DNA of 64,000 nt, taken from contig CM119378.1 in assembly GCA_051294905.1 (NCBI GenBank), positions 15,376,001 to 15,440,000 on the forward strand, given 5' to 3'. This document shows, piece after piece, positions 1,747 through 39,487 of this stretch. The notes below the pieces were generated by a model. That model made no database searches, was not told the DNA's origin, and saw nothing but the letters and a program-made list of their open reading frames with translations. Every line of letters starts with the position of its first letter. The first letter of the stretch is position 1. This DNA comes from Botryllus schlosseri. Taxonomy: Eukaryota. Made by a program: the position numbers and the translations under genes.

Positions 1747-2580
1747 ATGGACCCTGCTGAATGCCTGCTTGTTCTGGGAGATCAATCCAGGCCGTCCAAG
1801 ATTTCAAAGAAAGCCACACACGATTCATTAAAAAATGAATTTCAAAACCAATATCCGCATCAAATTCATGATGCAGTTCCAGTAGTGTTGCAGATCTGGG
1901 ACAATGATTGGAGTTATTGGGTAGACATACCGACCACTGATGATATTACATTGGTCTCTGGCAGCAAAGTAAGGATGATCCAGAGAAGTAATGTTGGTAA
2001 AAGATTGGGTAATTTGAGTCAAGATAGTTGTGCATTTTTTTGTTGTGATATGCAAGAGCGGTTCAGACCAGCTATTGCTCATTTCGAGGACATCGTTCTG
2101 GTATCAAAGAGGTTATTGGATGGTGCTTATGCACTCGATATACCTGTTCTTGTCACGGAGCAGTATCCAAAAGGATTACTAAAGACGGTTCCTGAATTGA
2201 ACATCACAAAAGCAAATGCTGTTATCGAAAAGACGGTATTCTCAATGATGGTGCCGGAGATGGAAAAAAAGCTAGAAGAACTGGGTAACCTGCAAAGTGT
2301 TGTACTTTTTGGTGTTGAGGCGCATGTATGTATTCAACAAACAGCATTGGACCTGCTTGCTAGAGGAATCGAAGTTCATGTAGTGGCTGATGCTACTTCA
2401 TCAAGATCTGATGTTGATAGGCACATCGCTTTCGAACGCTTGAGATCTCATGGAGCTATCATTACTACGGCAGAAACTGCCCTTCTGCAACTTGTGAAAG
2501 ATAAAAATCATCCAAAGTTCAAGGAAATACAAGGGTTGATCAAGGCAACTCCTCCACAGAATGGGCTGTCAAGCTTGTGA
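1747..2580 (+). CDS. ISOC1: Isochorismatase domain-containing protein 1 (single coding exon, 277 aa)
   Basis: FFCCDMQERFRPAI, VTEQYPKGL, VLFGVEAHVCIQQT, HVVADATSSRS and HPKFKEIQ match the family. The N-terminal extension VLQIWDNDWSYWVDIP resembles human ISOC1 VVQLFAEEWGQYVDLP, which favours ISOC1 over ISOC2. Confidence 0.95.
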   Translation: MDPAECLLVLGDQSRPSKISKKATHDSLKNEFQNQYPHQIHDAVPVVLQIWDNDWSYWVDIPTTDDITLVSGSKVRMIQRSNVGKRLGNLSQDSCAFFCCDMQERFRPAIAHFEDIVLVSKRLLDGAYALDIPVLVTEQYPKGLLKTVPELNITKANAVIEKTVFSMMVPEMEKKLEELGNLQSVVLFGVEAHVCIQQTALDLLARGIEVHVVADATSSRSDVDRHIAFERLRSHGAIITTAETALLQLVKDKNHPKFKEIQGLIKATPPQNGLSSL

Positions 2581-7100: not shown

Positions 7101-9248
7101 CTATGTCTAAACGCCGAATAATCCTGTCCTTGCCAAATGAGCTCAGTGGTATACAGAGGCGACGACCAATATATGCAAGTAACATATTTATCGATCGAAA
7201 TCATTCATTACCTTTGAAAAAATTATGTCGCGCCTCGCGCGACCACGACGTGGATGCACACTGCACAGTTGCACACAGAGTTTTCATGACATAATTGTTA
7301 TCAATTTTAAAGTGTAGTAATATAAGTATTGTTTCAACGTTACCTAATTCGGTTCGCTCCTATCGGACGACTGAAAAATGGTCATCAACATTCAAGTGGC
7401 CCGCGCAATACTTCGTAAATCTCATGTAGCCCTATGGCCGACAAGGTTGGCCACCCCTGATATAGATAAAATTGGACATTATTTGCAAATTACAATTCAG
7501 TTGCATAGAGGAAGAAAATAGCAATATGCATCTTCGCGATGCAGTCCAAAATTGATGCAATTTTTGGGATTATACCATGATACTGTGACAGAGTAAATAC
7601 ATCGTCTGGTTTTGTAAAATTTTTAAATTGATATAAATATAACGAGACGCTGCTTCCCACTTGACAAAATTAAAAATATTTGTGGTGTAGCTCAGCTGCT
7701 TGGGTCGAAGAAATGATTAAGAAAGACTGCATTTCCTAGTCCATCAATACTTGAGTAAGTGCATGTAGACTAGACATATGCTATTTCACTATTTCCTAAA
7801 TTTCGTTTTTGACCAATGTTTATTAGTAGTGAGAGTGTGTGTGCTTATAATCAGCAGGGTTGTAACCAAGTCACGAGGTTCCGAGTCACAAGTCAATGCA
7901 CTTTTATAGTTTTGACTCGAGTCAAGTCGGGTCATTTTCAATTCATCACCGAGTCAAGTCCGAGTCCAAGTCACGGTGTAGAGTGTCGAGTCCGAGTCAT
8001 AGTGTTTTGACTCGAGTCCGAGTCCAAGTCATTGTGTTGACTGATCAGTTCCGAGATAATGTCATGTGAAACCCACTTTTTACAACCCTGCTCGGTGATA
8101 TCGATAGCTTCACATTCATAATACACTAACTTTCCTCACTTTTAACACTTTTTGGTAGCATTTTCAAGTACCAGTACTGACGGACGATATAACAACAGTG
8201 TGAAAACTTTACTATTCTTCGAAATTACAATGAAATGCCTGTCTTGGCAGACCCAGTCTCGAGTCATATGACTTGGTCCGAGTCATGCGCAATGACTCGA
8301 GTTCAAGTCGAGTCAATACACAAATTGACTCGAGTCAAGTCATTTTTCATTTTTAAGAAAATGACTCGAGTCAAGTCGCGTCATCAAAAATCGCGACTCG
8401 AGTCATTACAACCCTGATAATCAGTATAGTGTGTAATGAGAAAATTAGTAAGTTAGATCTCTGTATTAGTTGCTGACTAATACACACGAGCTACAATTCG
8501 ATTGTTTTATCTACATTTTAATTATACAGGATTGGATATATGTCATGTTTGAATGATTCATATATATTAGGATATTAGAGACTCCATGTTATAAAATATG
8601 AAAAAAGGAAGGATATTTCGAAAGGCTTTCTTTCATGTTAATTGCATAATGAATAATTCGAGCTGTGCCACAATGGAACAATTTTCCATGCCTTCGTTAA
8701 TCATGTGTTTGCATATGTTTAATGGCTATATGATAGTCATTTAAACGTCAATGTGGCATATAATTTTCAAAGTAAATTGGTAATACTGTTGGAGTCGGAG
8801 TCGGTGTTCTCTTAAGAATATAGTCAGAGCCGGAGTCAAGTCGGTACGTTTAAAGACTCAGGAGTCGCAGTCGTATACGGAAAATGTGTGGAGTTGGAGT
8901 TGGCGGAAGGCGTGATCGATATGTTAGGTGGTAGTTTGATAATCCTGAAGGCTGACTAGTGTTCATTTAGAATAAATTGCTTGTATTTCAACTTGTATGC
9001 GGATATGTATTGACTCTACCGCTGACCTAGACCTGTCGGGTTCATTTTCCCTTCGCTCCTGGCCCAGTCACCACATTCAGTTTCTGACATCCGTTTCAAC
9101 ATTTTGACAGGTATGCGAACCCTGTCAAAAACCCCTTCAGTGGGAGGGGCCACCGCCTTCCGAAGGGGGATCTGGTGGCGGTAACGATTGGTGGACTCCT
9201 CTGGAAGAAGTTTTCCATGACGGCCATACTCCCAAATCATTCAACTGA
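4188..9248 (+). CDS. rhaM: L-rhamnose/L-fucose mutarotase-like protein (RhaM/DUF718 family), 2 exons, 131 aa
   Basis: Exon 1 is 4188-4445 (EEYKKLHSAVWP..NIRNFTIYY..EWWK, donor AAG|GTGAGT). Exon 2 is 9111-9248 (acceptor ttttgacag|, VCEPCQKPLQW..NDWWTPLEEVFHDGHTPKSFN*). The phase-0 intron is 4665 bp. Family residues Y..LH...WP and WW..LEEVFH are present. Confidence 0.9.
4645..4970 (-). mobile_element. LINE 3' fragment with internal deletion (same family as 630-1193)
   Basis: Reverse-strand translation DRKDHRSIKYAGPGVWNSIP/SSRLPDHD plus matching 3'UTR. Confidence 0.8.
5230..8903. mobile_element. About 3.7-kb foldback / inverted-duplication composite with a hAT-like left terminus (CAGGGCTGCGGAGTCGG)
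   Basis: 5240-5545 is mirrored by 8590-8903, 5825-6640 by 7260-7850 plus 8420-8590. Arms are diverged. It interrupts a LINE 3' fragment (5150-5229 left, 8904-8950 right). Confidence 0.75.
7855..8416 (+). mobile_element. hAT-type MITE, TIR CAGGGTTGTAA, GACTCGAGTC-rich subterminal repeats
   Basis: Perfect 8-bp TSD ATAATCAG (7847-7854 / 8417-8424). Same family at 13794-14319 and 40321-40896. Confidence 0.92.
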
Positions 9249-9604
9249 TGGTTACAAAAGCAGCGTCGTATTACACGCGTACTATACCTGATCTCATACA
9301 CTATCAACTCTGTATCGGATTATATCTCTTGCAGCCCAGCCCACTCTATATTTGCAACTTCCTATTATGTGGTTTCCTATCGTTGTTTTGTGGTCAGAGA
9401 ATGGTCTGAAATGTGGCATGCAGCATTCCAGCAATATTCGTGCTCGTATAAGTTGTGAATTAAACGAAGATGGATGTAAAATTTAAACTTCGGAATTTGC
9501 TAGTGGGTATATCCGCGAAAAAAGTCATCAAATATTCTACTTCGCAAGGCATTCTGAACCTCTCTGCCGCACCAGAAACGTCCACGCCATCAATATAGCC
9601 TACC

Positions 9605-9642
9605 CAGGGATTTCAAGAACTAGAATGTTCTAGAAATCCCTG
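9605..9642. mobile_element. 38-bp TIR-only hairpin relic (family C, CAGGGATTTCTAGAAC)
   Basis: CAGGGATTTCAAGAAC-TAGAAT-GTTCTAGAAATCCCTG with perfect 8-bp TSD AGCCTACC. Confidence 0.8.
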
Positions 9643-10028
9643 AGCCTACCAATTCTTTTTTACAGGATTCCATGCCCATTTGTGTTATCGATATGGTTAT
9701 AATTCCGTCAGCAACGACATCGCAGACAAAACAGCTTCGGCATGCCCTGAACTGCCGTCTAAATAAATTTGACTGACACTCATTAAAACCAGGCCAGCAT
9801 GCATAAATTTGTTCAATAAGTGTCGTTTCTGTGGAGCTAACTTTGACTCCGCATAGTTGAATTTCGTTTAATTTTGCATTGTGATGGAGTTGGTATTTGT
9901 GACGCAACCATGCTATCTGTCAAAACGAGACTGCAACTCAGGAGCAAGAGCAAGACAGCATTGTTGCGTCACAATGTCAAACTCCCTCAGCATGCAAAAT
10001 TCAAGGCTGATTTTGGGGGTGTTTCAGG

Positions 10029-10420
10029 TAGGGTTACCATACGTCCTCCATTAGGAGGATTTGTCCTCCGTTTTCGGGTTTTTGAAAATGTCCCCCGAGG
10101 ACGCCTAATTGTCCTCCTTTTTGGTGATTCGTCCTCCTTTACAGCTTTTAGAGCTAATATGATTGACAGAGTGTAGTGAGAATGGGCATAGATGACGCTA
10201 AATATGAAATTCGTGGTTCGACCAGCGGAGTCAAAGAATGAAAAATGTGGAAGAAAGACTGTATATTTCTGGAGCTGATCCGGAAAGTTTACCTTTTTTT
10301 AGTCAACCAGCCGCAAAGTCGGGAAAAATTTATCATTTTTTCCGAATTTTACCCCACAATCCTGAATCTGAAAATTTTGTCAGTGTCCTCCTTTGCCGGT
10401 TCCAAAATATGGTAACCCTA
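10029..10420 (+). mobile_element. hAT-type MITE, TIR TAGGGTTACCATA
   Basis: 8-bp TSD GTTTCAGG on both sides. Relative at 30126-30473. Confidence 0.9.
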
Positions 10421-10608
10421 GTTTCAGGGCCATGGGCAGAATAAAATTTATTCGTAATCAGTACAGCAGCAGCTTTCCTTTGACACCAGTTTTAACAAAT
10501 TTAGCGCTCGGCAAGCCGATCAAAAATGGTCGTTAAATTACCTTTGGCCCAATGGAAAGTATGACGTAACCCAAATGCAGTGAGCCGTTCAATCGCGCTG
10601 AGTAGGAC

Positions 10609-10979
10609 TATAGATAACTAACCTACGTAGGTTAGTTATCTATAGCAGGACACAATCGCAACCACGCAAGGACCATTGTTATGGTCATTGTGCTGCGTCA
10701 CTGCGATTGTTTAGAACAATGCCGATTTTCAGACTTTGAGGGGTATTTCGAGGGGGTTCCATTGCCCTGATCAGATTTTAATGTATATTATCAGAATCAA
10801 CGCGACTGTAGCTTTCAAATAAGATCAACTTTATTAAATTTGAGCGCTCGGGTCGAAATCTATGGGATTGGCAATTACGTTGCCGTTCCATGCTATGAAG
10901 CGACAACAAATCTTCGACTGTAGCATCACTCGACCGTGAATCACGTGATGCGCATCTATCCGTAGGTTAGTTATCTATA
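10609..10979. mobile_element. Family A element/relic: perfect 36-bp palindrome TATAGATAACTAACCTACGTAGGTTAGTTATCTATA (10609-10644) plus a further right TIR ending at 10979
   Basis: 7-bp flanks: GTAGGAC on the left, GCAGGAC after 10644 and GTAGTAC after 10979. Confidence 0.7.
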
Positions 10980-12584
10980 GTAGTACCGCGGTACTGTACA
11001 ACAAGTTACTAGTCTGCGCTCGAAATTATCGGACCACGATATCCCATATCTATATCTCCCACATACTAGGATATGCCACCTAATTTTCATGTTATTTTAT
11101 ATTCTGTTAGTTTTAAGCAAGTGGTTCATCATGACCATTTTACATGTTGGATTTAGGCTTACGTGTTCAAGGTCAAAGTGGGTTGTTTGATGTCGTCTTG
11201 GCTAATTCCTACCGATGGCAATCTTGTGATTATTATGAAATTATTGAGTAAGTAAGCCAAAAACGTCATTGCGAACGCTTCGCCCGCCTAGTTCGGCCAA
11301 GTCACGGTCGGATTACGCCTGGTCATGGAAACACGGCCGACATGTACAACGCATGCGTCATGGCCTTTCGGTCGTCCGTCGGCCGTGCATGGAAACGAAG
11401 TATATGATTCTACCTTCCAAAGAGCCATACATGTCAGTCAACTGTAAGTCACAATTCGTGATGTCATGGTAACACAAATTTGAACTCAGTACATGGAATT
11501 CGTCGTGTGCGCCATATTTACTCTTCAAAAACTCGTACTAATCATGCTGGTTCCCTTATTTGAGCAAATGAGCATGCGAAACTTGTGTTACATACATCTT
11601 TTGTAAGTTCTTGGTAATTGTATTACAATGAGAACCGTATGGCCAGGGGAGGCAGTGAGGCAGTGTTTCACCTGTCGTCGGGATTAGAGAAATAAAATTT
11701 TGAAACCTTCAATGAATTATTGGTATTTTCTATCGATATTCAAGAATGGCTACATTTTGAACATTTTTATTCATAAAGTCACGCCATTTGCGTATTTATT
11801 GTTCGAAAAAGCGCTAAAGGAGAGGTAGGCACAGGTGAGGCATGGACGGACCAAACCTCACCTGTGATAGCACAAATCCTCTTAAATATCTTAGAATATA
11901 TGATAACTGAAAATAATCGAATGCAATCGTTGCACTAATTCCGAAAATCTAAATATCGATCGACTTCCCAATTCTCAAAGTATTCGGCGGTAACATAACG
12001 TTGTACTATACACGCCTACATTTTAACGGCAGTGCTACTAAGCTACTTAGTAATCAAGAACGTGGATGGCTATATGGCGTTGTGTCTTTGTATGTAATAT
12101 GAATTTGTAATTGTGAGTGTCACTTTCATCGCAGTTCATTTTTCGCCGTAGATAGGGAAGACAATATGTATTTGAAAACAGCATTGTCATAGAGACGTCG
12201 CCATGTCTGCTATTCTTTTTGATCAACGTATCGTGCAAACCAAGATGTCGAGGCGGTCGCCGTCGCGATCGCAACTTAAATTTGATTATTTTGAAGAGTG
12301 GGGTCCGAGCCCCTGACCCTAAATACGTCACTGTCTTGACCTCTCAATGTGATGTTTATACTGCAATGAGAATAATTATTCTGACCGTGGTGAATAATTA
12401 TTATCAAGTTCCTGCATATTGATAAATTAAGTACAAAAATTAAACAGTTGACAAAAGAGCCATATCTTATACCCAAAAGAGCCATATATGGCTCGCAAGA
12501 CATAGGCTCCCGACCACTGGCCTATAGCATTCTAAATGATGCCAAACTCATTTAGGAATATCGATACGGCATATTGGTAATGTT

Positions 12585-15500
12585 TTATCCCACACGGGTC
12601 TGTCTACCAAAGATGCATTGAACGCGCGGATCTCCAATCAGAACAAATCCCGGATCACAAGAGAAGTAGCAGTAAGTGCCCACGCTTCCCGACCCTACGC
12701 GTACTCGCGCTCCATTATTTAGACCAGCAAGCTCCTCACAGCGACCTGTAAGTAGAGAAACTCCATAATGAGATTTACATCTGTATATATTTTCAGCAAA
12801 CATGACTAATCTTTCACAACTATTATAGCGCGCACTCCAGAAATGATTAGATTTCCTCACGTCCGCATATTGGTGGATCAGCAGACCATCCAGTGGAATT
12901 GTTGCACGTAATTACGGCGTCTCCAATTAGTCGCACCCCGTCCGGACAGAAGTAGGTACATACGACCCCGTCTCCACTGCTTATACACGATTTTCCTCCC
13001 CGTTGAGATCCCATTGGGATATTATTACAAGGATGTCCTTGCCGATTTTTAGACGGCAAAGTTGCATGTGTATTCTTCGGCTTTCCTGGGACTGTCAACA
13101 ACAGGTTGTACTCGATCAGTTACAATTTCAGGCTAATAGGGTTGCCATACGTTCGGACATGTCCGTAATTTCAGTGTTGAAACTGCGTCCGGGAGGAAAT
13201 GCTAAAATATGCTTAAATGTCCGGAATTTTTCAGACTTGAAAGGAGCTGAAAATTTTTTCGTGAATCAACATAAACAATAACTTTTTCTGTGGCAGATTT
13301 ATGCTACTTGAAATTTTTCTTCGCGCCATGCGCGATTTAGTGTCCCCTGCACTCGCAAAAAATACAATAAAAATATTTACAAAAATAACCTTCATTTGCG
13401 GAAATTAATCGCAATTATGAGAGACGATAAATATTCCTAGTGTCGATTAAGGCCGTTTTGATGCTTCAGTCAAAGACGTTGATTCTCAACCTGGGGATCA
13501 TTTGCCTTTTTTCTGGGGATGTTGAACGTAATCAGCTTCCAAAATAGGCCGTGAGCAAGTCTGGGCAAAGGTGCTGACCGGCTTAGGTCCCGTGCTGACC
13601 TTTTTCAGTACTCAACTCACCTCACAAAATTTCGAGGTGAGCTATGGAACATTTTCAAATTAGAATTGAAGTCGCGATCATAAAAGGTTCGAAACCACCG
13701 GATGTGCAACCTACTGGTGCGGACCGGCATTTCGGCTCATGAATATAGTTTTATACGTGTGACATGGACAAGACTTATCGATGTACAATTATCCAGGGTT
13801 GTAATGACTCGAGTCATTTTCTCAAAATCCAGCAATGACTCGACTCGAGTCAATCTGTGTAATGACTCGACTTGGACTCGAGTCATTGCGAATGACTCGG
13901 ACCAAGTCATATGATTCGAGACTCAGGCGGCCAAGACCGACATTTCATTGTAATTTCGAAGAATAGTACTCTAACCACACTATTGGTATTTCATCTATTT
14001 GTAGCGGTACGTGAAAATGCGACCAGAAAATGTTAAAAGGGAGAAAAATTAGTATATAAATGCGAACCGTTGGTTATCACCAAACAGTTTTAAAAAGTGG
14101 GTTAAACAAGACTTTAACTGGAAACTGAGCAGTCAATTTATTGGCTTGGACTCGAACTTGGGTCATAATACCATGACTCGGACTCGACCCTCTGCTCGCT
14201 GACTTGTACTCGGATGTGACTCGGTGGCAAATTGAAAATGACTCGACTTGACTCGAGTCACAACTATAAAGGTGAGATTGACTTGTGACTCGAAGCCTTG
14301 TGACTTGATTATAACCCTGCAATTATCGTCCCTGCATTATCGAAGTCATCACCTCCACCAGCTCTACCGCTATAACTCTAATCACGTGGGCGGAGAGAGG
14401 ATTATAATATTATATAATATATCTAAGAACCAATGGTAATAACAGATTTCATTCACGAAATTTAACAATTTTTCGCGCTCGGCACGAATAGTAACCAGAG
14501 GCAAGCCCCTAAGAAGTAGAGTTTATCACCCTATGGTGACCCCAGACCAGAAGTTTTTTTTGGGTGGAAGGGGGCTGACAAAGTGTTGTTTCGGTCCTGG
14601 TTACAATATGTAGGCCTAACAACCACAGAACTGTGCCGACCAAACAGTGTTTACAGCAGCCAGGGTGTCAAACATACGACCAACCAGATACTTTTATACG
14701 GGTCGTGAAGAAGTTTATTGCAGACCATATGTGAGAATGCCAACCATATAGCATTCACCAGAGATCAAATTAGAGATGACCCAATAACATGAGAGATAAT
14801 TCACGGCCTATGCCTAGAAATCCTCTCATCTTTACAATCGATAGGCAAAGCATTGATAGTGTGACATCAAATTGACAGACAATGTGTTTATACCTCATTT
14901 TAAAATCGACTAGCAAGCGCTAAAGAGTATCCGGATTTTGAACCACAAAAATAATGTAACCATAGGCTAAGGCTCACGGGCATCCTATATAATATCACCT
15001 GTGAATGAAATTATGGGCGATTCTGTAGTATTTCCTTCGACTGGAGCAGCTACACACGTCGGAGTGGGGCTGAAGAATGGCCTCAATCTTCTTTTGATTC
15101 TTCTACACGTACTTACGCTGTTGCCTTTCATGGCGTAACCTGTTTACGGCAGGTATACAAATGGAATTATAGATTCTTCGAATATATTATATAGACGTCA
15201 AATTATCATCCTTTTCATTTGGCAGCTACGACGTGTTGAGCTGCGTCACCATAGTTATAAAGATAGCGATCCTTCCAGGATCTATGAGTCACAATTAATT
15301 TGAATAACAAATGAGAATGGCATTTATTAGAATGACAAATAATAATTCAAGTTCAGGTCGGTCGGTTTTGTTTGACTGATAACTCGTTTGAATGACAGAT
15401 GATTCGAGTTCATGTGTAGGTCGGTTTCATTTAAGTGACAATGCCTATAATCGACATTCGAGCAGATGTATTCTCCTTCTAATTTTTCGGACGACTCAAG

Positions 15501-18500
15501 TATGTTTTGCCTACCTACACTACTTGATCATGTGGTTACGTATTTGGACTACTTACACTTCTACTTATAACAGTTTTTCAGTAAAACACGTTGAATTTTG
15601 TAAAGTAAGAAAGTAGTTTAGGATATGTAACCATCATCAGAGGTAGTCATTTACGAAGTATTTCTACTTCTATCTTCCAGCTTTCAGTTTCCGAGGCAAA
15701 ACTAGGCATTGAATACTTACTTTTTCAATTACTTAGAAGCCGTTACTTCCACGTCTATACTTGAGTACGAACGGTGACTACTCTGGCCAATGGCCACCTA
15801 TGTCCATCATTTTTATGAGTAATATCGTTCTAATGACTGGGCGAAATAGCTCATCGCTGTTTTATTCCTCCTACTACTCTCAACATCAACATCTTAATTA
15901 TTCTTAGCGGTTTCAAATGTTTCATCGTTCCACGGCACAAATGTTTTTTTGCATATCTGGACTTTATGTATAAAGTAGACGTAGCCTACTTAATGTTGCG
16001 CCTTTCCCGAAACAGCTATTTTGGGGTGTCTGAACTTGCGAGCAAAGCATAAACTCATGATGAATGAATAATTTTCCATCGTTTGGTGATTACAAATTTC
16101 TATATCTATACCTGTATAGTCTGATGGCCACAAATGAAGCAAAGGCTTGCTAAACCAATACTTATACAAATACGTACATATAGAACTCTGCACATTTGCA
16201 GTGTGCAGCAGTGTGCGATGTTCAGTGGATATTGTATATTATCATAGCCGGACTTGTACTACTGGATTTTCAAAATGCGCAACTAGAACTAGAACTAGAA
16301 TTATACTCACTATTTTAAACTCGCAACTATAGAGATACAACTACTCACTTTTCAAAATCCGCAACTAGAACGAGAACTAACGACCTTTGAAAATCCGCAA
16401 CTGTATCAACCACAGAACTATACCGGCGTTCCCAGACGCACACGTAATACATAGTAATGTAATAAATGTGTAGTGAGATGTGGAATGCGGTAGATTTTTG
16501 TTCTTGTGACTCAGTGAAAATTACGGGTTTCTCGAAAGCTTACATATGTGTGTAATTGAATAGTATATTCATATTAAAATGAACCCGAATATTTTCTGCT
16601 GACACTCGTCAGCGATAATCATCAGCAACTAGTAGAGAATAAATATGTGTGTAAGAATTCCCAGGTTATTAAAGGTTAAGAATCGCACTGAACTAGAGTT
16701 AATTCTAGAAATAGAACTACTCGTTTTTCAATATCCGAAGAGCTTCTTGTAGGCACAGAACTTCAATATACAATTGAATAATATATTCATATTGAAATGA
16801 ACCCGATTATTTTCGGGTGACACTCGCCAGCGGTATTCGTCAGCAACTAGTAGAGAATTGGAAAGAACGCTGTAGCCTATATCAACAATCGTATCTCGAA
16901 ATATGACGTCACCAGCATGAAATGAGGTCTGAAATAAAATAGCTGAAGAGCTTCTTGGAGGTACAGAACTTCAGTATACAATTAAATAGTATATTCATAT
17001 TGAAATGAACCCGAATATTTTCGGCTGACACTCGCTTGTATGTTCTTTCCAATTCTCTACTAGTTGCTGACGATTACCCCTGACGAGTGTCAGCCGAAAA
17101 TATTCGGGTTCATTTCAATATGAATATACTATTTAAAATAAAATAGCGCTCAATGTACTATTTTAAGACGGTACACGAATTCCTTTTGTTGACAAAGCTT
17201 GGGCTGATGTATTTTGATATGATTTTCAATATCCGCAACTAAAACAAGGACTATTACTAAAAAAACGTTAGTTAGTTGACTGTCAACAAACTATATGGAA
17301 AGTTTTTACATGTACTAGTATGATCAATTGATCATGGCATATCAATTCAACCTCTGATATGGAATATATCAAATGTTAGTTTGAGTATATTTTTAAAGTT
17401 CAGCTCGAGTGTCAATCGCGTCTCGAGGTCAAATTTAATCTGGCTTGCAGCGTTTGTCATAGAATGGCGCTTACTGCTAGAGACACGAACAGCTATTGCT
17501 TGCGAGGCAAGGTAATATATAGGGATACGATCCTGATGTCCAAACATGGAACACGAGTTTTGGGAACACAATAGAAATTGCGTATGATGCTGCTCGAAAC
17601 AACTTAATTTATATATGTCACTCAAACTATAGATAACTAACCTTCGTAGGTTAGTTATCTATACTACTACGTAGGTTAGTTATCTATACTACTACGTAGG
17701 TTAGTTATCTATACTCAAACGAATAGAACGACAATTTTAGATGCGTCACTTAAAAACTCTCGATTACGTCACTTGCAGTTGATCGCTCATTCAGGGAATA
17801 TCGCAATCCATTTGGAAGTATATAGCAGGCGCTACGAATCACCAAGTTGTATAGGATGGGATTGGAATTCTCTCTGCGTTATGCCTCAGCATGGACCGGC
17901 TCCGGGATCCACATTTTGCGGAGTAGCAACTGGAAGTTAAACTAGCCTATATGTAGCCGTCAGGTTGGCAATTTAGAGTTTTTAGAAAATCATATATGAG
18001 CCGCTGGAAATTTGTGACTCCAATGACCAGCACGTTACATATGATCGAGATTATTGGTTACGGTCATGAGCAGGACAGATCTTGACAAAATCAACAACAT
18101 CCATAACATGCATGCATACATACCGAATTCACAAATGAACTGACAACTCGATCCAATTTCTCCTAGAAAATTTGTGAATGTGCATTCCATCTCGCCGTGA
18201 ACAGGCGCGATTGGCTTCTTAACACATCGGTTCATTGGCCTACTGCGTCCTGATAATAATGTTACAAAACAATCAGTGCTTTTCCAAATGTACGTGACAA
18301 TGAACCAACCTATGTTGACATCCCCTTGACACCAATTTTTTTTCTTGTGACATTCTAATCCACTGCAGCAGCATCGACAAACCGAATTCGGTCGCCTTTT
18401 CCGACATTGCAATTTATTCTATAGTGATATGCGTAGGGTTATACACATGTCCATTACAGCCGCAACCCTAAACCCATAATTGGCAGGGGGGGGGAGCTCG

Positions 18501-20324
18501 AACTGACACAAAATTATTTCGTAAATCAAAATAATGTCGAATATTTTTCGGCAGAATTATCTGCCTAAATATCTTTCTTCAAGTCTCGCGCGATTTAGCG
18601 TCACCAGTTTTATGGATTTTAGCATCAGTGCCTAAAAAAACTAAAACTAATAACCACAAAAACACATAAGTTACCGAAATGAGTCTAACTGTATTCGCAA
18701 TTTTGAGAGAGAGGTATATTCTTGATGGTGCTTGAGGACGCAGGGATGCTTTAGTCTAGGGGTGTAAACCTGCTGGTCCGGGACAATCAGGCATACAGGC
18801 ATTTCGGCTCATGAGAGTCATGAATAGTATTGAAGATGTGGCATGAACATGATTAAGCTGTACAGTAGAGTTGATAAAAAATAACTCTTTTTTTCCGGAT
18901 TCCAGTAATTCACTGCTTGAATTGTCAGGTTACCCTACAAAGGGCTGCTCACCAAATTTGGTTCTATTCTAACTACTATAAGCCGCTAGAGACCCAATTA
19001 AAATTTTTAATTTATTATTATTATTTTCTGTCAACACCATGAAATTGTGGAGTTGTCTTCAAAAACGATGCAGAACAAATTTGACTCGATTCCAACCATA
19101 GAAGCGAAGTTATTAGTGCTTTTCATTCATAATTCTGGGAATACCCACCGCATGGCCTACTAAAAACTAGTAGACCATGCCCACCGTCAATGCTATTTTT
19201 GGAAATTCAGAACTTTCAACTGCACTTCTACAGATTGGAATTGAGTTAAATTTGATTTGCATCGTTTTTGAAGACAGCTCAACAATCTTATGAGGCTGAC
19301 AGAAAAATTAAAAAAAGATCAATTTTTCATAATATATTAAAAATTTAAATTGACTCTGCGGCGGCTTATATTCGTTAGAATTTAATTAAATTTGGTGTGC
19401 ACCGTTTTTTAGGGTAGCCTGACAATTTAATCAGTGAATCACTGGAATCTGGAAAAAGGTATTTTTGAACAACCCTACTCCATGCTTGCATGCTGACCTG
19501 AAGTTTGTCATTGTTGCAGGCTTGAGACTGTTTGCAACTTTTGGTGATCATTGATCTTCCTCGAAACCCACTGTGGTATCTTATTTCCGTTGCGCAAACC
19601 ATCTGCATGAAGAAATTAGGCTATCAACCCACGGTTGAGCGGAAAGTATTGTGCTGTATAACGCGGATGTGACCCAATATCTCGAACCGTAGGGCAGGCA
19701 TCGTTTCTCCACGACGTGATTGTTCGTCACAAGGCCAATTCTCCACGGGACAAAATTTGGGATGCTTTTGGGCGGTTCCGGGACCATGAGCAAAATAAAA
19801 TACATACGTTCAAAATCAACCCGCAGTAGCTTTCAGTTAATGCCGGGCTTATCAAATTGTGCAGTTGTGCACCCGTTCAGAAAGGGCTATAGGTGCCCTC
19901 ATTCTCTTTGAGCAGATGGAGATAGCCAGCGAGCTGTGCAAAGTGCTTGTGTCTGCGCACCTGGGAATGATACCATGATGCAACTAATACTTACTTCTTG
20001 ATCAGATTGGCAAGTTATTATTTCGCCTTTCTGTACGCATTCGTCAACGGAACGAGCGTTCGTGCATCTAAGACAGTCCAATCCTACACAGGCAAGATGC
20101 AGAGATTTATAAAAATGATGACACTGATTTTTATAATTAGATACAATCCATGTTTTAGCTATTTCTTATGTCTTGGCCGAACGTTGAACAGACCTCTGGG
20201 CGGCATCTATCATGGAATGATTTCTAAAAATAATTGAATTATTTCAAAGCTCACCGTCAACATCGCTGAACGTAAACAAAAATCCAACAAGAAACGTTAT
20301 TGTAGTTGTACAACACGGCCTCAT
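12585..20324 (-). CDS. Secreted LU (Ly6/uPAR three-finger) plus sushi/CCP protein, 8 exons, about 341 aa (signal peptide, LU, 2 complete and 1 truncated CCP)
   Basis: Exons (minus): 20324-20255, 20083-19995, 19602-19498, 18418-18310, 18249-18124, 15139-14999, 13085-12861, 12745-12585. Total 1026 nt, phases consistent. Motifs LDCLRC..ECVQKG..TC..ITKSCKQ..CRCCCSGLECH, then GSSCQFICEFGYAMKG and CTYFCPDG..WSADPPIC. The 3' end is uncertain. Confidence 0.82.
13794..14319 (-). mobile_element. hAT-type MITE, TIR CAGGGTTGTAA
   Basis: Perfect 8-bp TSD CAATTATC. Opposite orientation to the copy at 7855. Confidence 0.9.
16545..17135. repeat. Three direct copies of a 90-130 bp core spaced about 210 bp apart, followed by one inverted copy
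   Basis: Core ATAGTATATTCATATTGAAATGAACCCGAATATTTTC.GCTGACACTCG.CAGC at about 16560, 16780 and 16985. Reverse complement at 17041-17135. Confidence 0.8.
17628..17713. mobile_element. 86-bp family A hairpin relic with two extra 25-bp right-end duplications
   Basis: 36-bp palindrome plus 2x(CTACTAC-GTAGGTTAGTTATCTATA). Perfect 7-bp TSD CTCAAAC (17621-17627 / 17714-17720). Confidence 0.8.
18966..19381. mobile_element. Pogo/Tigger-like foldback MITE (long imperfect TIRs ATTCTAAC..TATAAGCCGC)
   Basis: About 170-bp imperfect inverted arms. The termini resemble pogo-type TATAAGCCGC ends. No clear TSD. Confidence 0.6.
19151..19179. mobile_element. 29-bp TIR-only hairpin relic (family B, CATGG..CCATG)
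   Basis: CATGGCCTACTAAAAACTAGTAGACCATG with perfect 7-bp TSD CCCACCG. Confidence 0.78.
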
Positions 20325-29497: not shown

Positions 29498-30125
29498 TGA
29501 ATGAATAATACCGACTACTGTGTTGGTATAGTGAATAGAGTACGAATTTCCGATTGATCCGTCTTTGTTCATTTCGATTACTATGAAATTGTCAAGAGTG
29601 AAAATAAGGTATCATGCAAATTTCTGCAGTCGACCAGACGACTAACAGATTATATAATGATTATCGATAATACGATCGATGAGCAATATCATAGATGGTT
29701 GTAATTCGTCAGAGCTTTACCCGATATTGAAATACTTACTGACATTGTTCTTTGGAGTGTTTGAAGCGAAACAGTGTGTGACAACGACTGAAAAGTTTTG
29801 GTACCGGTACATGTAACGAACTTTACACACAAGTGTACCTGACTGAAAGTCGTTCCTTGATCGTCGGTACACAACCGTACGCCCACTTACCGTCACTATA
29901 CACGTGCTGTGGGTCGTAAGACACAACTTTGTCACAATATCTACTGATAGCCATCGAAAATGAATTTTCTGCCTTAATCGCGTCGAGTGAGTTCTAAAGT
30001 TAAGAAAGGCGTTCGGGGAATTTTGTAAAGGGTTAAGAAGTGGTGACGATTGACCTTGATACCACAGATAAACATGGATTGGAGTGGTAACTTGCGTGAA
30101 TATATTTTATAGGGATGGTATAGTA

Positions 30126-30473
30126 TAGGGTTACTATACGTCCTCTTTTAAGAGGATTTGTCCTCTTTTTTGACTTTTTTGAAAGTGCCCTCGGAGGACA
30201 CCCTTTTGTCCTCTTTTTTGAGATTTTGTCCTCTTTTTTTATAATTTTGGTCATACTTATAGCAAAATCCGACTGAAATGCCGTAAAACAGCACCGAAGC
30301 GACGCTCCGGCGGGTATTTCGGGAGCTGAGCGGAAAAATGACCTTTTTTTTTAGTCAACCGACCACCAGGTGGGTAAAATTTACCATTGTTTGAGAATTT
30401 TCCTCCGGTTTTGCAAGTCTGCAAATTCTGAAAAATTGTCCTCTTTTTAGATTTCCAAAATATGGTAACCCTA
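30126..30473 (+). mobile_element. hAT-type MITE, TIR TAGGGTTAC(C/T)ATA
   Basis: Perfect 8-bp TSD GTATAGTA. TTTGTCCTC subterminal repeats as in 10029-10420. Confidence 0.88.
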
Positions 30474-31139
30474 GTATAGTAGCGTAGCAATACTCGACGC
30501 CGAATACATTGTCCGTCTGGCCTAGACCGTTGCGGCGTAAGCTTATATTCCCTTGCAAGTCCTCGTCGAAATTGTTGGCAAAGCGACGGAAGATATTGAT
30601 TTTCAGGGAATATTATATCATTTGATTGCCCCAGTTGATACATTTGGCGACGTTCAAAACGTCATTATATACTTTCAGCATGGTAGCATTATGTGGCTTG
30701 AGTCGTCGCTAGGTATATCGTGTCGCCTACATTAATATAGGCTCTCATTTCACTGAAATGTAGGGTTGGAATTAGCAATATGACGTCACGTGACGTCATG
30801 AGGTTCACGTTCGCGTTCACACAAAACCATTCAAAAAGGTTCGCGTTAACACGAACCTGAACATTTCAGAGGTTCACACCATCCCTAATATTTTAGCTAC
30901 AGTGCGAATGATGTGAGTTTCTGAGGAAAATGGTTGGTCCCAAAATGCTTTTCACACCTTCCCCTTGAATTTGAGACCGAATCATATTTAGAGCCCCTTC
31001 CGAAGTATGACTAAGAATAACCACGCATGGCGCATTGGTGGTAAAATTTATTGATTTCGATTTCGAAATGTTGTTATCTAGAGAGAAGCGGATATGTGTT
31101 AGTAAGGTTATGGCGTGCACTGTTCTCAGGAAGCACCAC

Positions 31140-36362: not shown

Positions 36363-36550
36363 TCCGCTCTTCATATAGCCTACGACCTAGCAAATGCCCA
36401 CTGATTGCTGGGCAGCTTTCAGACAGCTTTTCCCACTCACGAATGTCTTAAAGTATACAGTTCATTTTTGGAGTCTGGACATCGAATTTTCAATCGCGAT
36501 TAGTCGTTGGGTGATTGGTGTAACTACTGCAATTGTAAGTGTATTATATC

Positions 36551-36581
36551 CAGGGATATCTAGAACTTCTAGAAATCCCTG
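36551..36581. mobile_element. 31-bp TIR-only hairpin relic (family C)
   Basis: CAGGGATATCTAGAAC-TTCTAGAAATCCCTG with perfect 8-bp TSD ATTATATC. Confidence 0.8.
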
Positions 36582-39487
36582 ATTATATCATTACTAATCT
36601 GCACCTATATGTCGAGAAAATTGCGAAGTTTTTTTTTATACAGTGCCTCAAACTAAAACTGTCAACAGTCTGCATTTCGCTGATCGCTGAAAAAATACGA
36701 ACGGACGATATATAATACCTCACCTCCAGATGTCCTATGTCGGTCATAATCCCTGCTTCCGAAAGGAGCCATTTTACAGCCGAGAGAGTGCGCTGGGGAG
36801 CCTTACGAAATTTGGCAATTACATGGATCGGTGCGCGAGGTCTTGTAGTCGGCTTTTGTTTGCGTAGTGTTTCGATGCGCTTTCACGCGCTGTTGCAGTC
36901 TCGCACATTCGAGGTGGTATTGAGCAGGACCGGAGGCGATAGATAGGTGTCGCGTTGCATCCGATTTCGGGATCGTTCCCCTCGTTACTTTTCGTATTTA
37001 CGGGCAGAAATGCTACAAGTAGGTTAATTGGAAGAAACACAGATTACGCCCACCTCGCCGTTCGAGTTGAAGCGAGGTGCACATTTCAGTGTTAGCGTCA
37101 GTCAGGTGAACTTGAGTTTACTTCTAAGACGAGCGCGATATTATTGGAAATGCTACCGAGGTCGTCCCATGTCTGCGGTCATTATCTGGGGTGCAGCGTG
37201 CGATGTCTAGCTTTTAATGCGATTCCCATAACTTTCGTGATCGTAAGTCGGAAACAAAACATTGGGATCGGCTTCTTCTTGAGAGCAATTCCAGGGCATA
37301 TATTGAGATGCATGTGAGATCGCGGTCCTGATAGTGTCAATCGCAGGTGCACGGGAATGACATATATTTGTTACCTATGTCTATAATAACGGTGCCTGCT
37401 GCAAGATAAATTTTCGCCCGACATGCGGAGTGTCGACGTTTTATTTCGCAGTTTTAACTTTGCGTCGGCTTACTTTGGTCTGGAAATAGCGAGTCTTTAA
37501 GCGTGGCAGTGCACATAACCCAAATACAATATCTTGAAGTGTCCATGACGCCAAATCAATTTGGAAATATTGAACTTCGCCGCTCTTAATCACCAGTTCT
37601 ATCGACGCCCGCACTAATCACATGCAATTAGATTGACAAGCGTCACGGAAACGGCTGTATTTGAACTTTTCAACTTTGGCCCGTCCTTCATCAATATCGC
37701 TTCGGGTTTGACATTTCTCTGCGCCCGAAGAGATTATTCCAATTCGTTATGCACCAGCGCCAGTTGACGCTTGCTCAGCTGTCAGTCAATAACGAGAAAC
37801 GAGAAGGAAACAATATTAAGTTGCTATTGACATCTTTGATGTACCGACTGAGTATTTCAGTTCGACAGCGAGTGTACCGAGGTGATGCTACGGTCGGTAT
37901 TAATTCTGTAGGTAGCGGGTAACTTGCGTCCGTGTAAATATGATGCGATTTACGATTCGTGTAATATGATAAGTACCATGTTGTGATTTTTATTTGCATT
38001 ATATATCCCTCGACGTGCTATACCATGTTTACTGTCGCTAAATAGCTATGTAGTAGTTAATCGCATGATAGTGTTGCGATATTATGTACTTTCCGGTATT
38101 TTACGGAATTATACGACCGCGCTAGCATCAAATTGTAAATCAAGCCTATCTTTCGTGACTGCTGATAGAAGATATTGGTAGGTATCTGTCCTTGTCACAT
38201 TTGTATAACTTGTAGCGCGTCGAGGATGTCGGAAATGCAGACACTGATTGTCGCGGTAAACCCATTCATTCCCGTGAGAGATATGCTGCTAGTCTGTATT
38301 TGTGTATTTATCGGAATTCCGTTGACTGCCGAATACATGCGCGTCTTATATCAGCTCTTTGGCTGTTGGCGAAAAGGAATTGAATTTCCATATCTATCAA
38401 TGGGTACCGGTATATCAAATTTTTATGTAGCACCCTCTTCTCGCCACGCCATGTCTAGCGCGGTTCCCAGGCGAGCGGTTCCGTTTTTAGCGCAATGAAT
38501 CGACACGCTCTTGGATTCCCCTGCCAAGATTGACTTGTTGGTTCTCTGCCCTACGTAATGATAGACGATATGAAACCAGTGTCAGTTTGATATTCTGTAC
38601 GAGTGCGCATCAAAATTCATTACATGTCCCGCGCCATCTGGCAGTTACAAACGAGGCAAATGATTTCAATCATGCAATATTTCCTTGAGAACTAGAAATA
38701 AGCGTCTAGTCGGCTAATTTCTCGCAGTTTGGCGCTGATGCGTGGAGAGATTTCTCGTCGTGCAGCCCAATCACGTATGTATTCAAGTACGTACTTCTGC
38801 CGTGGTGGAATCGCGGCGGATACATCCGTAATTGATGAAAAAAGGGGAATGAGGAGGCCTCCCGCGTTGTAGCGATATGCGTGATGGATCGGGCCGCGTG
38901 TCACTGCGATTGATTGATTGACGTGTTTTCCATTCGCGGACAAACGGTGAAACCGTCACGCAAATAAAAATCTCTTGATAATGAAGCGATGTCAAAGAAA
39001 TGTGAAGAGTCTAGCCTTCGGTCGAGAGCCCTCGACCGCTGCCAACAACCTTTTAACCCCGTCGCACCACATTGATCGGAGATGCGCGGAGTTGTTGTTT
39101 CGCGCTGCACCACTCGAAAATATATGTAGCTAGGGCCGTAAATCTATGTTTTATAACGACCTCGTCGCATTGCTACGTGCCGCTATCTCTCATTAACCAA
39201 ATTCGGGCGAAATCATCGCGAGATACTAATTGCTTAGCTGTGTAATTTTCGCGTTAAGTTATATCTTATAATGCACAAAAGCATCCAACGATATGCCGGC
39301 GCGGCGATGCTTTTATCTTGATCCCGATAGTACGCTGGTCGTAAACGCTGTATCTCTTTATTTATCAGGTGTTAATTTGAGAAGTAAAATTTGCGAGGTT
39401 TAACGCGTTTTAACGTGTCGAGATTTATATCCGTCCCTGTCGCGCTAAGCTGCCCACTACGGGAATGAGAAGGACCACGGCTTTCTA

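What the first reader, a model, noticed from the sequence alone, without database searches (positions are those of the whole stretch)
9597..9650. Micro-hairpins with 7-8 bp TSDs that look like P-element-type excision footprints (family C, site 1)
Seen: a 38-bp insert of 16 nt TIR + 6 nt filler (TAGAAT, resembling the adjacent TAGAA) + 16 nt TIR, ends CA..TG, with perfect 8-bp TSD AGCCTACC. Five such tiny hairpins from three unrelated TIR families occur in 27 kb (9605, 10609, 17628, 19151, 36551), each keeping 12-19 nt per end. Established: Drosophila P transposase leaves 17-nt 3' overhangs at the donor site, and end-joining repair typically retains about 16 nt of each TIR between the TSDs. P-superfamily TSDs are 7-8 bp. 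hAT and Tc1 excision does not leave TIR stubs of this size. Inference: these record past activity of several P-superfamily families and show that the staggered-cut mechanism operated in this lineage. They are too short for routine repeat annotation.
Basis: partly seen in the sequence, partly recalled or inferred. Interest (0 to 1): 0.75.

Follow-up and report, generated by a model that had tools for sequence, protein, structure and literature searches.

The report
Transposon-end stubs: likely excision scars
A 38-bp mini-palindrome boxed in by an exact 8-bp repeat is most likely the scar left when a cut-and-paste jumping gene left this sea-squirt chromosome, keeping about 16 bases of each end as the fruit-fly P element does. 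The process is known, and whether this family is a true P element is unproven.

Summary
At 9605-9642 two 16-nt inverted arms (15/16 complementary) flank a 6-nt filler. Perfect 8-bp direct repeats (AGCCTACC) box them in. The other four hairpins exist too, and I found a solo end (10961-10979) as well. Hairpin plus target-site duplication (TSD) of 7 bp or more: 4 in the window, 0 in 10 shuffles.

Best reading (about 0.55): these are excision scars. The transposase cut about 16-19 nt inside each element end, and end-joining sealed the two stubs, which is how the Drosophila P element behaves.

Support within the window:
- Inserts cluster at 29-38 bp.
- Junctions differ between copies: filler, extra partial ends, and a solo stub joined through microhomology.
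- Seven intact hAT-like MITEs have no stubs, while families A, B and C have six stubs and no long copy (Fisher p = 0.0006).
- Family A sits in targets that resemble the GTANTAC consensus of the P-superfamily element Galileo.

P-superfamily membership of family C, the family in this finding, is not shown. Its CAGGG ends and 8-bp TSD fit hAT equally well, and no transposase could be reached.

The site-1 hairpin is also present in a second individual. No clean empty allele was seen.

This scan has already reported the same class of scar elsewhere in this genome. Interest is moderate.

The parts
9597..9604 (.). Site 1, left copy of the 8-bp target-site duplication AGCCTACC
   Evidence: family D6, 100% identical, spacing 46
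9605..9620 (+). Site 1, left 16-nt end stub of family C (CAGGGATTTCAAGAAC). The next base T may be position 17.
9621..9626 (.). Site 1, 6-nt filler TAGAAT. It imitates the neighbouring CTAGAA(A)T of the right arm (templated-insertion type).
   Evidence: what the sequence shows directly
9627..9642 (-). Site 1, right 16-nt end stub of family C (consensus CAGGGATTTCTAGAAC on the minus strand)
9643..9650 (.). Site 1, right copy of the 8-bp TSD AGCCTACC
36543..36589 (.). Site 5, second family C stub pair. TSD ATTATATC (36543-36550 and 36582-36589) around a 31-bp insert of 16 + 15 nt with no filler.
10602..10651 (.). Site 2, family A. A 36-bp perfect palindrome (18+18, 10609-10644) between GTAGGAC and GCAGGAC, inserted in a very high-copy repeat.
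10961..10986 (-). Solo 19-nt right end of family A (10961-10979) followed by GTAGTAC (10980-10986). Its inner edge overlaps the host repeat by up to 8 nt (CGTAGGTT).
   Evidence: (loose ends behind 10968)
17621..17720 (.). Site 3, family A. TSD CTCAAAC (17621-17627 and 17714-17720), an 18+18 core (17628-17663), then two extra 25-nt copies of the right end (17664-17713).
19144..19186 (.). Site 4, family B. TSD CCCACCG around a 29-bp insert (19151-19179) with CATGG ends. It can be read as 12 + 17 nt.

Best explanation
Each micro-hairpin marks a place where a cut-and-paste DNA transposon once sat and then excised.

Shown:
- A target duplication of 7-8 bp survives on both sides.
- Between the two copies lie only the outermost 15-19 nt of the element's two inverted ends, joined head to head. 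The junction carries no filler, a short templated filler, or extra partial end copies.

Inferred:
- The transposase cut the 5' strand about 16-19 nt inside each end. The donor flanks therefore kept long 3' overhangs made of terminal-repeat sequence, as Drosophila P transposase does with its 17-nt stagger.
- End joining then sealed the two overhangs.

For family C (site 1 and site 5) the four retained ends are 16(17), 16, 16(17) and 15 nt. None exceeds 17. That fits an overhang of fixed length trimmed by 0-2 nt, with a 6-nt polymerase-templated filler at site 1.

For family A the self-complementary TACGTA at positions 16-21 lets two identical overhangs of 19-22 nt anneal. This gives the same 36-bp palindrome at independent sites.

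The stubs cannot move again under such a cut, because a 30-38-bp element would be cleaved through its middle. They are inert fossils.

The statement 'it works like P' is what the evidence supports. The statement 'family C is a P-superfamily element' remains open.
For: 1. The structures are real and not chance.
2. The same end sequences recur at unlinked sites with different TSDs: C at 9605 and 36551; A at 10609, 10961 and 17628. They are therefore insertions of mobile-element ends, not local palindromes.
3. Insert sizes of 29, 31, 36, 36 (core) and 38 bp sit at the bottom of a 22-82 bp detection range. P = 0.0017 for all five being 38 bp or less under a uniform null.
4. Junctions differ between copies of one family. 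C: 16+6+16 versus 16+15. A: a plain 18+18, an 18+18 with two extra 25-nt right ends, and a solo stub whose inner edge shares up to 8 nt with the host repeat. Three contigs of other copies of that repeat run on past 10968 with different sequence. Contigs from elsewhere in the genome show further junction variants of family A: a 3-nt central deletion and a repeated left end (tables 4 and 5c). This looks like a repair spectrum, not like copies of one element.
5. Family-specific contrast. Four hAT-like MITE families have 7 intact copies of 348-778 bp with 8-bp TSDs and no stub. Families A, B and C have 6 stubs and no long copy. Fisher p = 0.0006. A generic deletion process would not spare the far more abundant MITEs.
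6. The 7-mers next to family A ends (GTAGTAC 6/6, GTAGGAC 5/6, CTACTAC 5/6) match the GTANTAC TSD consensus of Galileo, a P-superfamily element. Only 0.4% of window 7-mers reach 5/6 (consensus from PMC4168063).
7. Established knowledge. P transposase cuts 17 nt inside the inverted repeat, and donor breaks are repaired by NHEJ or HR (PMC7776569). P-superfamily TSDs are 7-8 bp (PMC3698922).
8. The site-1 hairpin with both TSD copies lies on a 1078-nt contig of a second individual, about 3% diverged, with only 1 gap over 909 nt (table 8). It is a stable inherited feature.
Against: - No element longer than a stub with these ends is in the window. No transposase could be linked to them.
- Family C has the CAGGG terminus and 8-bp TSD typical of hAT, and shares CAGGG with intact hAT-like MITEs here.
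- Both family A hairpins have the same 36-bp core, which a mobile micro-element would also give.
- The two family C inserts differ by one 7-nt indel plus two substitutions, so common descent is not excluded.
- Summed contig depth hints that family A hairpin sequence may be present in hundreds of copies. That is many for scars.
- No clean empty or occupied allele was seen. The alternative form at site 1 is a 145-bp replacement.
- The sample is 5-6 events in one window.
Confidence: 0.55

Rival explanations
1. Extreme internal-deletion derivatives made by abortive gap repair. After excision of any cut-and-paste element (hAT for family C), the break is repaired from the sister chromatid. Synthesis stalls after a few nucleotides on each side and the nascent strands are joined. 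Nearly the whole element is lost, without any special cleavage chemistry.
For: - Family C has hAT-type ends and an 8-bp TSD.
- Both family A and family C ends contain self-complementary motifs (TACGTA; TTCTAGAA) at which nascent strands could anneal.
- The extra 25-nt right-end copies at site 3 look like repeated rounds of copying from a template.
- Internal deletion by gap repair is established for P and Ac/Ds (PMC1562414; own knowledge).
Against: - It predicts a broad spread of retained lengths. All inserts here are 29-38 bp, and the family C junctions do not use the TTCTAGAA microhomology.
- It should act on the much more abundant hAT-like MITE families too, yet these show no stubs.
Confidence: 0.2
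2. Mobile micro-elements. The hairpins are themselves minimal transposons made of two terminal repeats, moved in trans by a transposase that needs only the 16-19-bp end. Each copy with its TSD would then be an insertion, not a scar.
For: - TSDs are perfect.
- The family A core is identical at two sites.
- There may be a high copy number of family A hairpin sequence.
- No long elements are nearby.
- First-reader notes elsewhere in this genome describe 22- and 28-bp 'TIR-only' palindromes with 8-bp TSDs (unchecked leads).
Against: - Junctions differ within families, and there is a solo stub and a multi-end array.
- P and hAT elements need subterminal binding sites well inside the ends (10-bp transposase sites inside the 31-bp repeats: PMC7776569; hAT: own knowledge).
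- Under a 17-19-nt staggered cut, a 30-38-bp element would fall apart into single strands (inference).
Confidence: 0.17
3. Chance palindromes or locally templated insertions unrelated to transposons.
For: Short palindromes are common in AT-rich eukaryotic DNA. There are 239 raw hairpin hits in the window.
Against: No shuffle produced a hairpin with a TSD of 7 bp or more. The same 16-19-nt ends recur at unlinked loci with different TSDs. Unrelated hairpins with the same outer 11 nt have no TSD.
Confidence: 0.03

Closest known systems
Drosophila P-element excision footprints (17-nt staggered donor cleavage followed by end joining)
   Same: Both TSD copies are intact, with about 15-17 nt of each inverted end joined head to head. 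Short templated filler is sometimes present. TSD is 8 bp and the ends are CA...TG. The 17-nt cut and NHEJ repair are from PMC7776569.
   Different: The host is an ascidian. These are natural, inherited scars, not induced revertants. Family C starts CAGGG rather than CATG. No THAP/P-type transposase has been linked to it. Family A seems to need an overhang of 18-22 nt rather than 17.
Galileo / 1360 branch of the P superfamily (7-bp TSD, palindromic GTANTAC target)
   Same: Families A and B make 7-bp TSDs. Family A targets (GTAGTAC, GTAGGAC, CTACTAC) fit GTANTAC.
   Different: Family C, the subject of this finding, makes 8-bp TSDs with no such motif (AGCCTACC, ATTATATC). Galileo has very long inverted repeats, and nothing is known here beyond 19-25 nt.
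hAT superfamily elements and their MITEs
   Same: 8-bp TSD and a (C/T)AGGG terminus. Seven intact hAT-like MITEs with these features lie in the same window.
   Different: hAT excision makes hairpins on the flanking DNA and removes the whole element end, so its footprints alter the TSD junction and hold no 16-nt end stubs (own knowledge of Hermes and Ac). The intact hAT-like families here have 10-13-nt repeats and no stubs.
Internally deleted non-autonomous derivatives (Ds, KP-type P elements, P-MITEs of Anopheles)
   Same: Both ends and the TSD are kept and the interior is lost. P-MITEs are described in PMC1562414.
   Different: Those derivatives are 200 bp to kilobases long and keep the subterminal binding sites. 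The inserts here are 29-38 bp and keep only the outermost 15-19 nt.

Membership tests
P-superfamily excision footprint | Both copies of a 7-8-bp target-site duplication retained around the remnant | tested here: met
   Perfect 8-bp AGCCTACC at 9597-9604 and 9643-9650. Site 5 has a perfect 8-bp TSD.
P-superfamily excision footprint | No more than about 17 nt of each terminal repeat retained, joined head to head, with or without short filler | tested here: met
   Family C retains 16(17)+16 with a 6-nt filler, and 16(17)+15. All five inserts are 29-38 bp. Family A needs 18-22 nt, slightly over 17.
P-superfamily excision footprint | Longer elements with the same termini exist and encode a THAP-domain P-type transposase | not testable with these tools
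   - No long copy in the window.
- No THAP or transposase frame in the window.
- This species is absent from the protein collection; the best hit is 58% identical.
- Public DNA collections hold no copy.
P-superfamily excision footprint | The same site is occupied by a full element, or empty with one target copy, in other haplotypes or species | tested here: inconclusive
   From:
- The hairpin is present in a second individual.
- The alternative form skips 9554-9700 with 39 unrelated letters between.
- A contig about 10% diverged stops aligning exactly at 9604/9605, and what follows was not shown.
P-superfamily excision footprint | P-type target-site motif (GT...AC palindromic pattern) | tested here: not met
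   The family C TSDs AGCCTACC and ATTATATC show no such pattern. It is met only for family A.
hAT superfamily | 8-bp TSD and terminal YARNG | tested here: met
   CAGGG terminus and 8-bp TSD. These features are shared with seven intact MITEs in the window.
hAT superfamily | Excision removes the complete end (flank-hairpin mechanism), leaving footprints without terminal-repeat stubs | tested here: not met
   16-nt stubs of both ends are present. The intact hAT-like families in the window have no stubs.
Mobile MITE / micro-transposon | Many copies of uniform length and identical internal junction, each with its own TSD | tested here: inconclusive
   The family C copies differ (38 versus 31 bp). 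The family A cores are identical, but one has extra end copies and one is a solo end. Genome-wide copies could not be listed.

The most novel reading that the evidence does not exclude
Family C is a hAT-like transposon lineage by its CAGGG terminus and 8-bp TSD, and by sitting beside conventional hAT MITEs. Yet its transposase would cut about 17 nt inside the ends as P transposase does. The long-stagger donor cleavage, so far known only for P, would then either occur outside the P superfamily, or P-type enzymes in ascidians would have acquired hAT-like termini. Natural scars would then let the cleavage offset of each family (16-17 for C, 18-22 for A) be read straight from a genome.
Probability: 0.12. 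Interest if true: 0.75.

Novelty: new member of a known kind. Interest (0 to 1): 0.45.

Why it matters
If the reading holds, these stubs are permanent, countable fossils of excision events. They record where elements once sat, and they outnumber the surviving elements. They also report the cleavage offset of the transposase without biochemistry.

That would extend the P-type staggered cut, so far shown for Drosophila P, to several transposon families of a chordate relative. It would also give a simple genomic assay for the trait.

Routine repeat annotation misses such 30-38-bp remnants. They may matter for counting past transposon activity and for interpreting small palindromic indels in sea-squirt genomes.

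The value of this particular site is limited, because the same class was already reported elsewhere in this genome by this scan.

Tried and rejected
1. Longer copies of the three end sequences in the window: none.
2. A transposase in the window: none.
   - The three ORFs of 200 aa or more are a sushi-repeat exon, a teashirt-like zinc-finger gene and an isochorismatase-like gene.
   - None of the 76 frames of 90 aa or more looks like a transposase.
   - A THAP-motif regex found nothing.
3. Reaching this species' proteins or allelic contigs through the protein collection failed. There was no exact record, and the best relative was only 58% identical.
4. A scan of public metagenome contigs for family C hairpins returned 27 unrelated, mostly bacterial hairpins without TSDs. 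They served only as a negative control and were not pursued further. Some come from human-gut metagenome assemblies, and I read only the matched stretch.
5. Viral and prokaryote genome collections hold no family A end.
6. Reads were available only as Logan contigs, so there was no per-read evidence.
   - The alternative form at site 1 could not be aligned to the reference segment, so it is not a clean empty site.
   - A copy-number estimate for family C from bin depths (order of tens of copies) is too rough to rely on.
7. Rfam found no RNA family in the window. The hairpins are too short for microRNA precursors, so that reading is rejected.
8. Kimbacher et al. 2009 on Ciona P elements is not held, so ascidian P termini could not be compared.
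9. The idea that the 7-mer after the solo stub is a third copy of the site-2 TSD is rejected in favour of a shared target preference.

Full report
**What is there.**
Site 1 reads, left to right:
- an 8-bp direct repeat AGCCTACC (9597-9604);
- a 16-nt arm starting CAGGG (9605-9620);
- six bases TAGAAT (9621-9626);
- the inverted copy of the arm (9627-9642);
- AGCCTACC again (9643-9650).

The arms pair at 15 of 16 positions. As single-stranded DNA the stretch folds at -13.2 kcal/mol, z = -6.8 against shuffles.

A second insert of the same end family lies at 36551-36581. It has 16 + 15 nt with no filler and sits between perfect ATTATATC repeats.

Family A (ends TATAGATAAC...) appears three times:
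- as a perfect 18+18 palindrome at 10609-10644, between GTAGGAC and GCAGGAC;
- as an 18+18 core plus two additional 25-nt right-end copies at 17628-17713, between CTCAAAC repeats;
- as a solo 19-nt right end at 10961-10979, followed by GTAGTAC.

Family B (CATGG...) is a 29-bp insert at 19151-19179 between CCCACCG repeats.

**Is it more than chance?**
Short hairpins (arms of at least 11 nt, span of at most 82 bp) carrying a perfect flanking repeat of at least 7 bp number four in the window and none in ten dinucleotide-preserving shuffles. A second scan with different settings gave none in 20 block shuffles.

A scan of public metagenome contigs for hairpins with the same outer 11 nt returned 27 unrelated, mostly bacterial hairpins. 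None has a flanking repeat longer than 4 bp. The flanking repeat is therefore not a property of such hairpins.

The same 16-19-nt ends recur at unlinked places with different flanking repeats. That marks them as ends of mobile elements that inserted with a 7-8-bp target duplication.

**Surroundings.**
This is consistent with protein hits to Styela and Ciona.
- Site 1 lies in single-copy DNA, with flank depth about 12-25 in the source sample. It sits between a gene block ending near 9248 and a very high-copy repeat that starts near 9940.
- That repeat carries site 2 and the solo stub. It is itself interrupted by a 392-bp MITE with TAGGG ends and the 8-bp duplication GTTTCAGG (10030-10421). Contigs of other copies skip this MITE, so they act as paralogous empty sites.
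- The window holds seven intact MITEs of 348-778 bp with (C/T)AG(G/A)G ends and perfect 8-bp duplications. They belong to four hAT-like families.
- No RNA family and no transposase frame is present.

**Mechanism.**
Three in-window results point to a stereotyped, family-specific process rather than generic deletion.

1. Insert size. The five inserts are 29, 31, 36, 36 (core) and 38 bp, at the bottom of a 22-82-bp detection range. P = 0.0017 under a uniform null. For family C the four retained ends are 16(17), 16, 16(17) and 15 nt. None exceeds 17, and the junctions do not use the internal self-complementary TTCTAGAA.

2. Junction diversity. Junctions vary within a family.
   - Site 1 has a filler that imitates the neighbouring CTAGAA(A)T.
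   - Site 3 has extra partial end copies.
   - The inner edge of the solo stub coincides with up to 8 nt of the host repeat. Three contigs of other copies of that repeat continue past 10968 with different sequence, which indicates a microhomology junction.
   - Contigs from elsewhere in the genome show further family A variants (tables 4 and 5c).

   This looks like the product spectrum of end joining.

3. Family contrast. The hAT-like MITE families have seven intact copies and no stub. Families A, B and C have six stubs and no long copy (Fisher p = 0.0006).

The only characterised transposase whose donor cut leaves this much of each end is that of the Drosophila P element. It cleaves the 5' strand 17 nt inside the inverted repeat, and the donor break is repaired by NHEJ or homologous repair (PMC7776569).

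For family A, positions 16-21 of the end (TACGTA) are self-complementary. Two identical overhangs of 19-22 nt would therefore anneal and give the same 36-bp palindrome at independent sites. This is inference. It means the identical family A cores do not argue against scars.

**Membership.**
P-superfamily elements make 7- or 8-bp duplications (PMC3698922). Galileo, a member with 7-bp duplications, prefers GTAGTAC / GTANTAC (PMC4168063).

The 7-mers beside family A ends match that consensus at 6/6, 5/6 and 5/6 specified positions. Only 0.4% of window 7-mers reach 5/6. This is real, if small-sample, evidence that family A is P-like.

For family C there is none. Its duplications show no such motif. 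Its CAGGG terminus and 8-bp duplication are the same features as those of the hAT-like MITEs next door.

The family B and C ends agree at 9 of their first 13 nt, including CTAG at positions 10-13 (p about 0.001). This hints that C belongs with the 7-bp families, but it is weak.

hAT excision, as known from Hermes and Ac (own knowledge), removes the whole end and cannot leave 16-nt stubs. If family C is hAT by descent, it does not behave like one.

I could not reach a transposase:
- the species is absent from the protein collection;
- it is absent from the searchable DNA collections;
- the paper on Ciona P elements is not held.

**Reads.**
Only assembled contigs of public runs were available.
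- A 1078-nt contig from a second individual of the same species, about 3% diverged, spans 9111-10019 with a single gap. The hairpin and both duplications are therefore inherited and not private to the assembly.
- The source sample and a marine metagenome also hold a form in which 9554-9700 is replaced by about 39 unrelated letters. I could not align these to the reference. It is a structural variant, not a clean empty site.
- One contig, about 10% diverged, stops matching exactly at 9604/9605, the boundary between duplication and hairpin. What follows was not shown, so this stays a lead.

**Rivals.**
- Abortive gap repair (0.20) explains stubs for any superfamily. But it predicts a broad length spread and should also hit the abundant MITEs.
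- A mobile micro-element (0.17) explains the perfect duplications and a possibly high copy number of the family A palindrome. It fits the heterogeneous junctions, the solo stub and the known need for subterminal binding sites poorly. Under a long staggered cut such an element could not be excised as a duplex.
- Chance is excluded (0.03).

**Standing.**
Earlier notes of this scan on other DNA of the same genome describe the same class of scar. Two follow-ups reached the same reading for the 7-bp families. I treated these as leads only.

What this window adds:
- a contrast between stub-leaving families and intact hAT-like MITEs;
- the Galileo-like target of family A;
- the caveat that the 8-bp family C cannot yet be called P.

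The kind of scar is known from Drosophila. Here it is a natural, multi-family record in a sea squirt, so I file it as a new member of a known kind, with moderate interest.

Noticed in passing
window 10030-10421: A 392-bp MITE with TAGGGTTACCATA ends and a perfect 8-bp duplication GTTTCAGG, inserted into a high-copy repeat. Contigs of other repeat copies skip it (joints 10018 to 10421/10451). Summed depth indicates thousands of copies. A second copy lies at 30126-30473.
   Followed up: partly
window 9940-10029 and 10422-10968: A very high-copy dispersed repeat, with summed contig depth 10^4 or more against about 12 for single-copy DNA. It hosts the MITE, the site-2 hairpin and the solo stub. 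It contains an internal 63-bp inverted repeat at 10650-10712. Its class is unknown.
   Followed up: partly
window 11324-11395: A 56-bp element with 10-nt inverted ends CACGGCCGAC and a perfect 8-bp duplication CATGGAAA, lying in repeated DNA. It is longer than the other stubs and its interior is not palindromic. It may be a further end family or a small MITE.
   Followed up: no
window 7855-8416, 13794-14319, 40321-40896: Three copies (526-576 bp) of a hAT-like MITE family with CAGGGTTGTAA ends and perfect 8-bp duplications. Their interiors are made of many GACTCGAGTCA-type inverted motifs. An extra right end at 8080-8090 suggests two adjacent or nested copies.
   Followed up: no
window 30110-30887: A 778-bp element with TAGGGATGGT ends and the duplication ATATTTTA. 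It carries the 348-bp TAGGGTTAC MITE nested 16 bp from its left end.
   Followed up: no
window 9554-9700: The source sample and a marine metagenome hold an alternative form in which about 145 bp, including the site-1 hairpin, are replaced by about 39 unrelated letters. This is a heterozygous structural variant of unknown origin.
   Followed up: partly
window 17019-17099: An 81-bp inverted repeat whose complementarity continues into the flanks (GAACCCGAATAT... / ...ATATTCGGGTTC). It looks like a small foldback-type element with arms longer than 25 nt and no evident target duplication.
   Followed up: no
window 50249-52747: An intronless 832-aa frame with a zinc finger matching human Teashirt homolog 3 (E = 2e-5 against PDB 2dmi). 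It is a host developmental gene, not a transposase.
   Followed up: partly
window 1747-2580: A 277-aa single-exon frame with an isochorismatase-family domain (Pfam E = 1e-30). This exact product is not on record in the gene collection.
   Followed up: no
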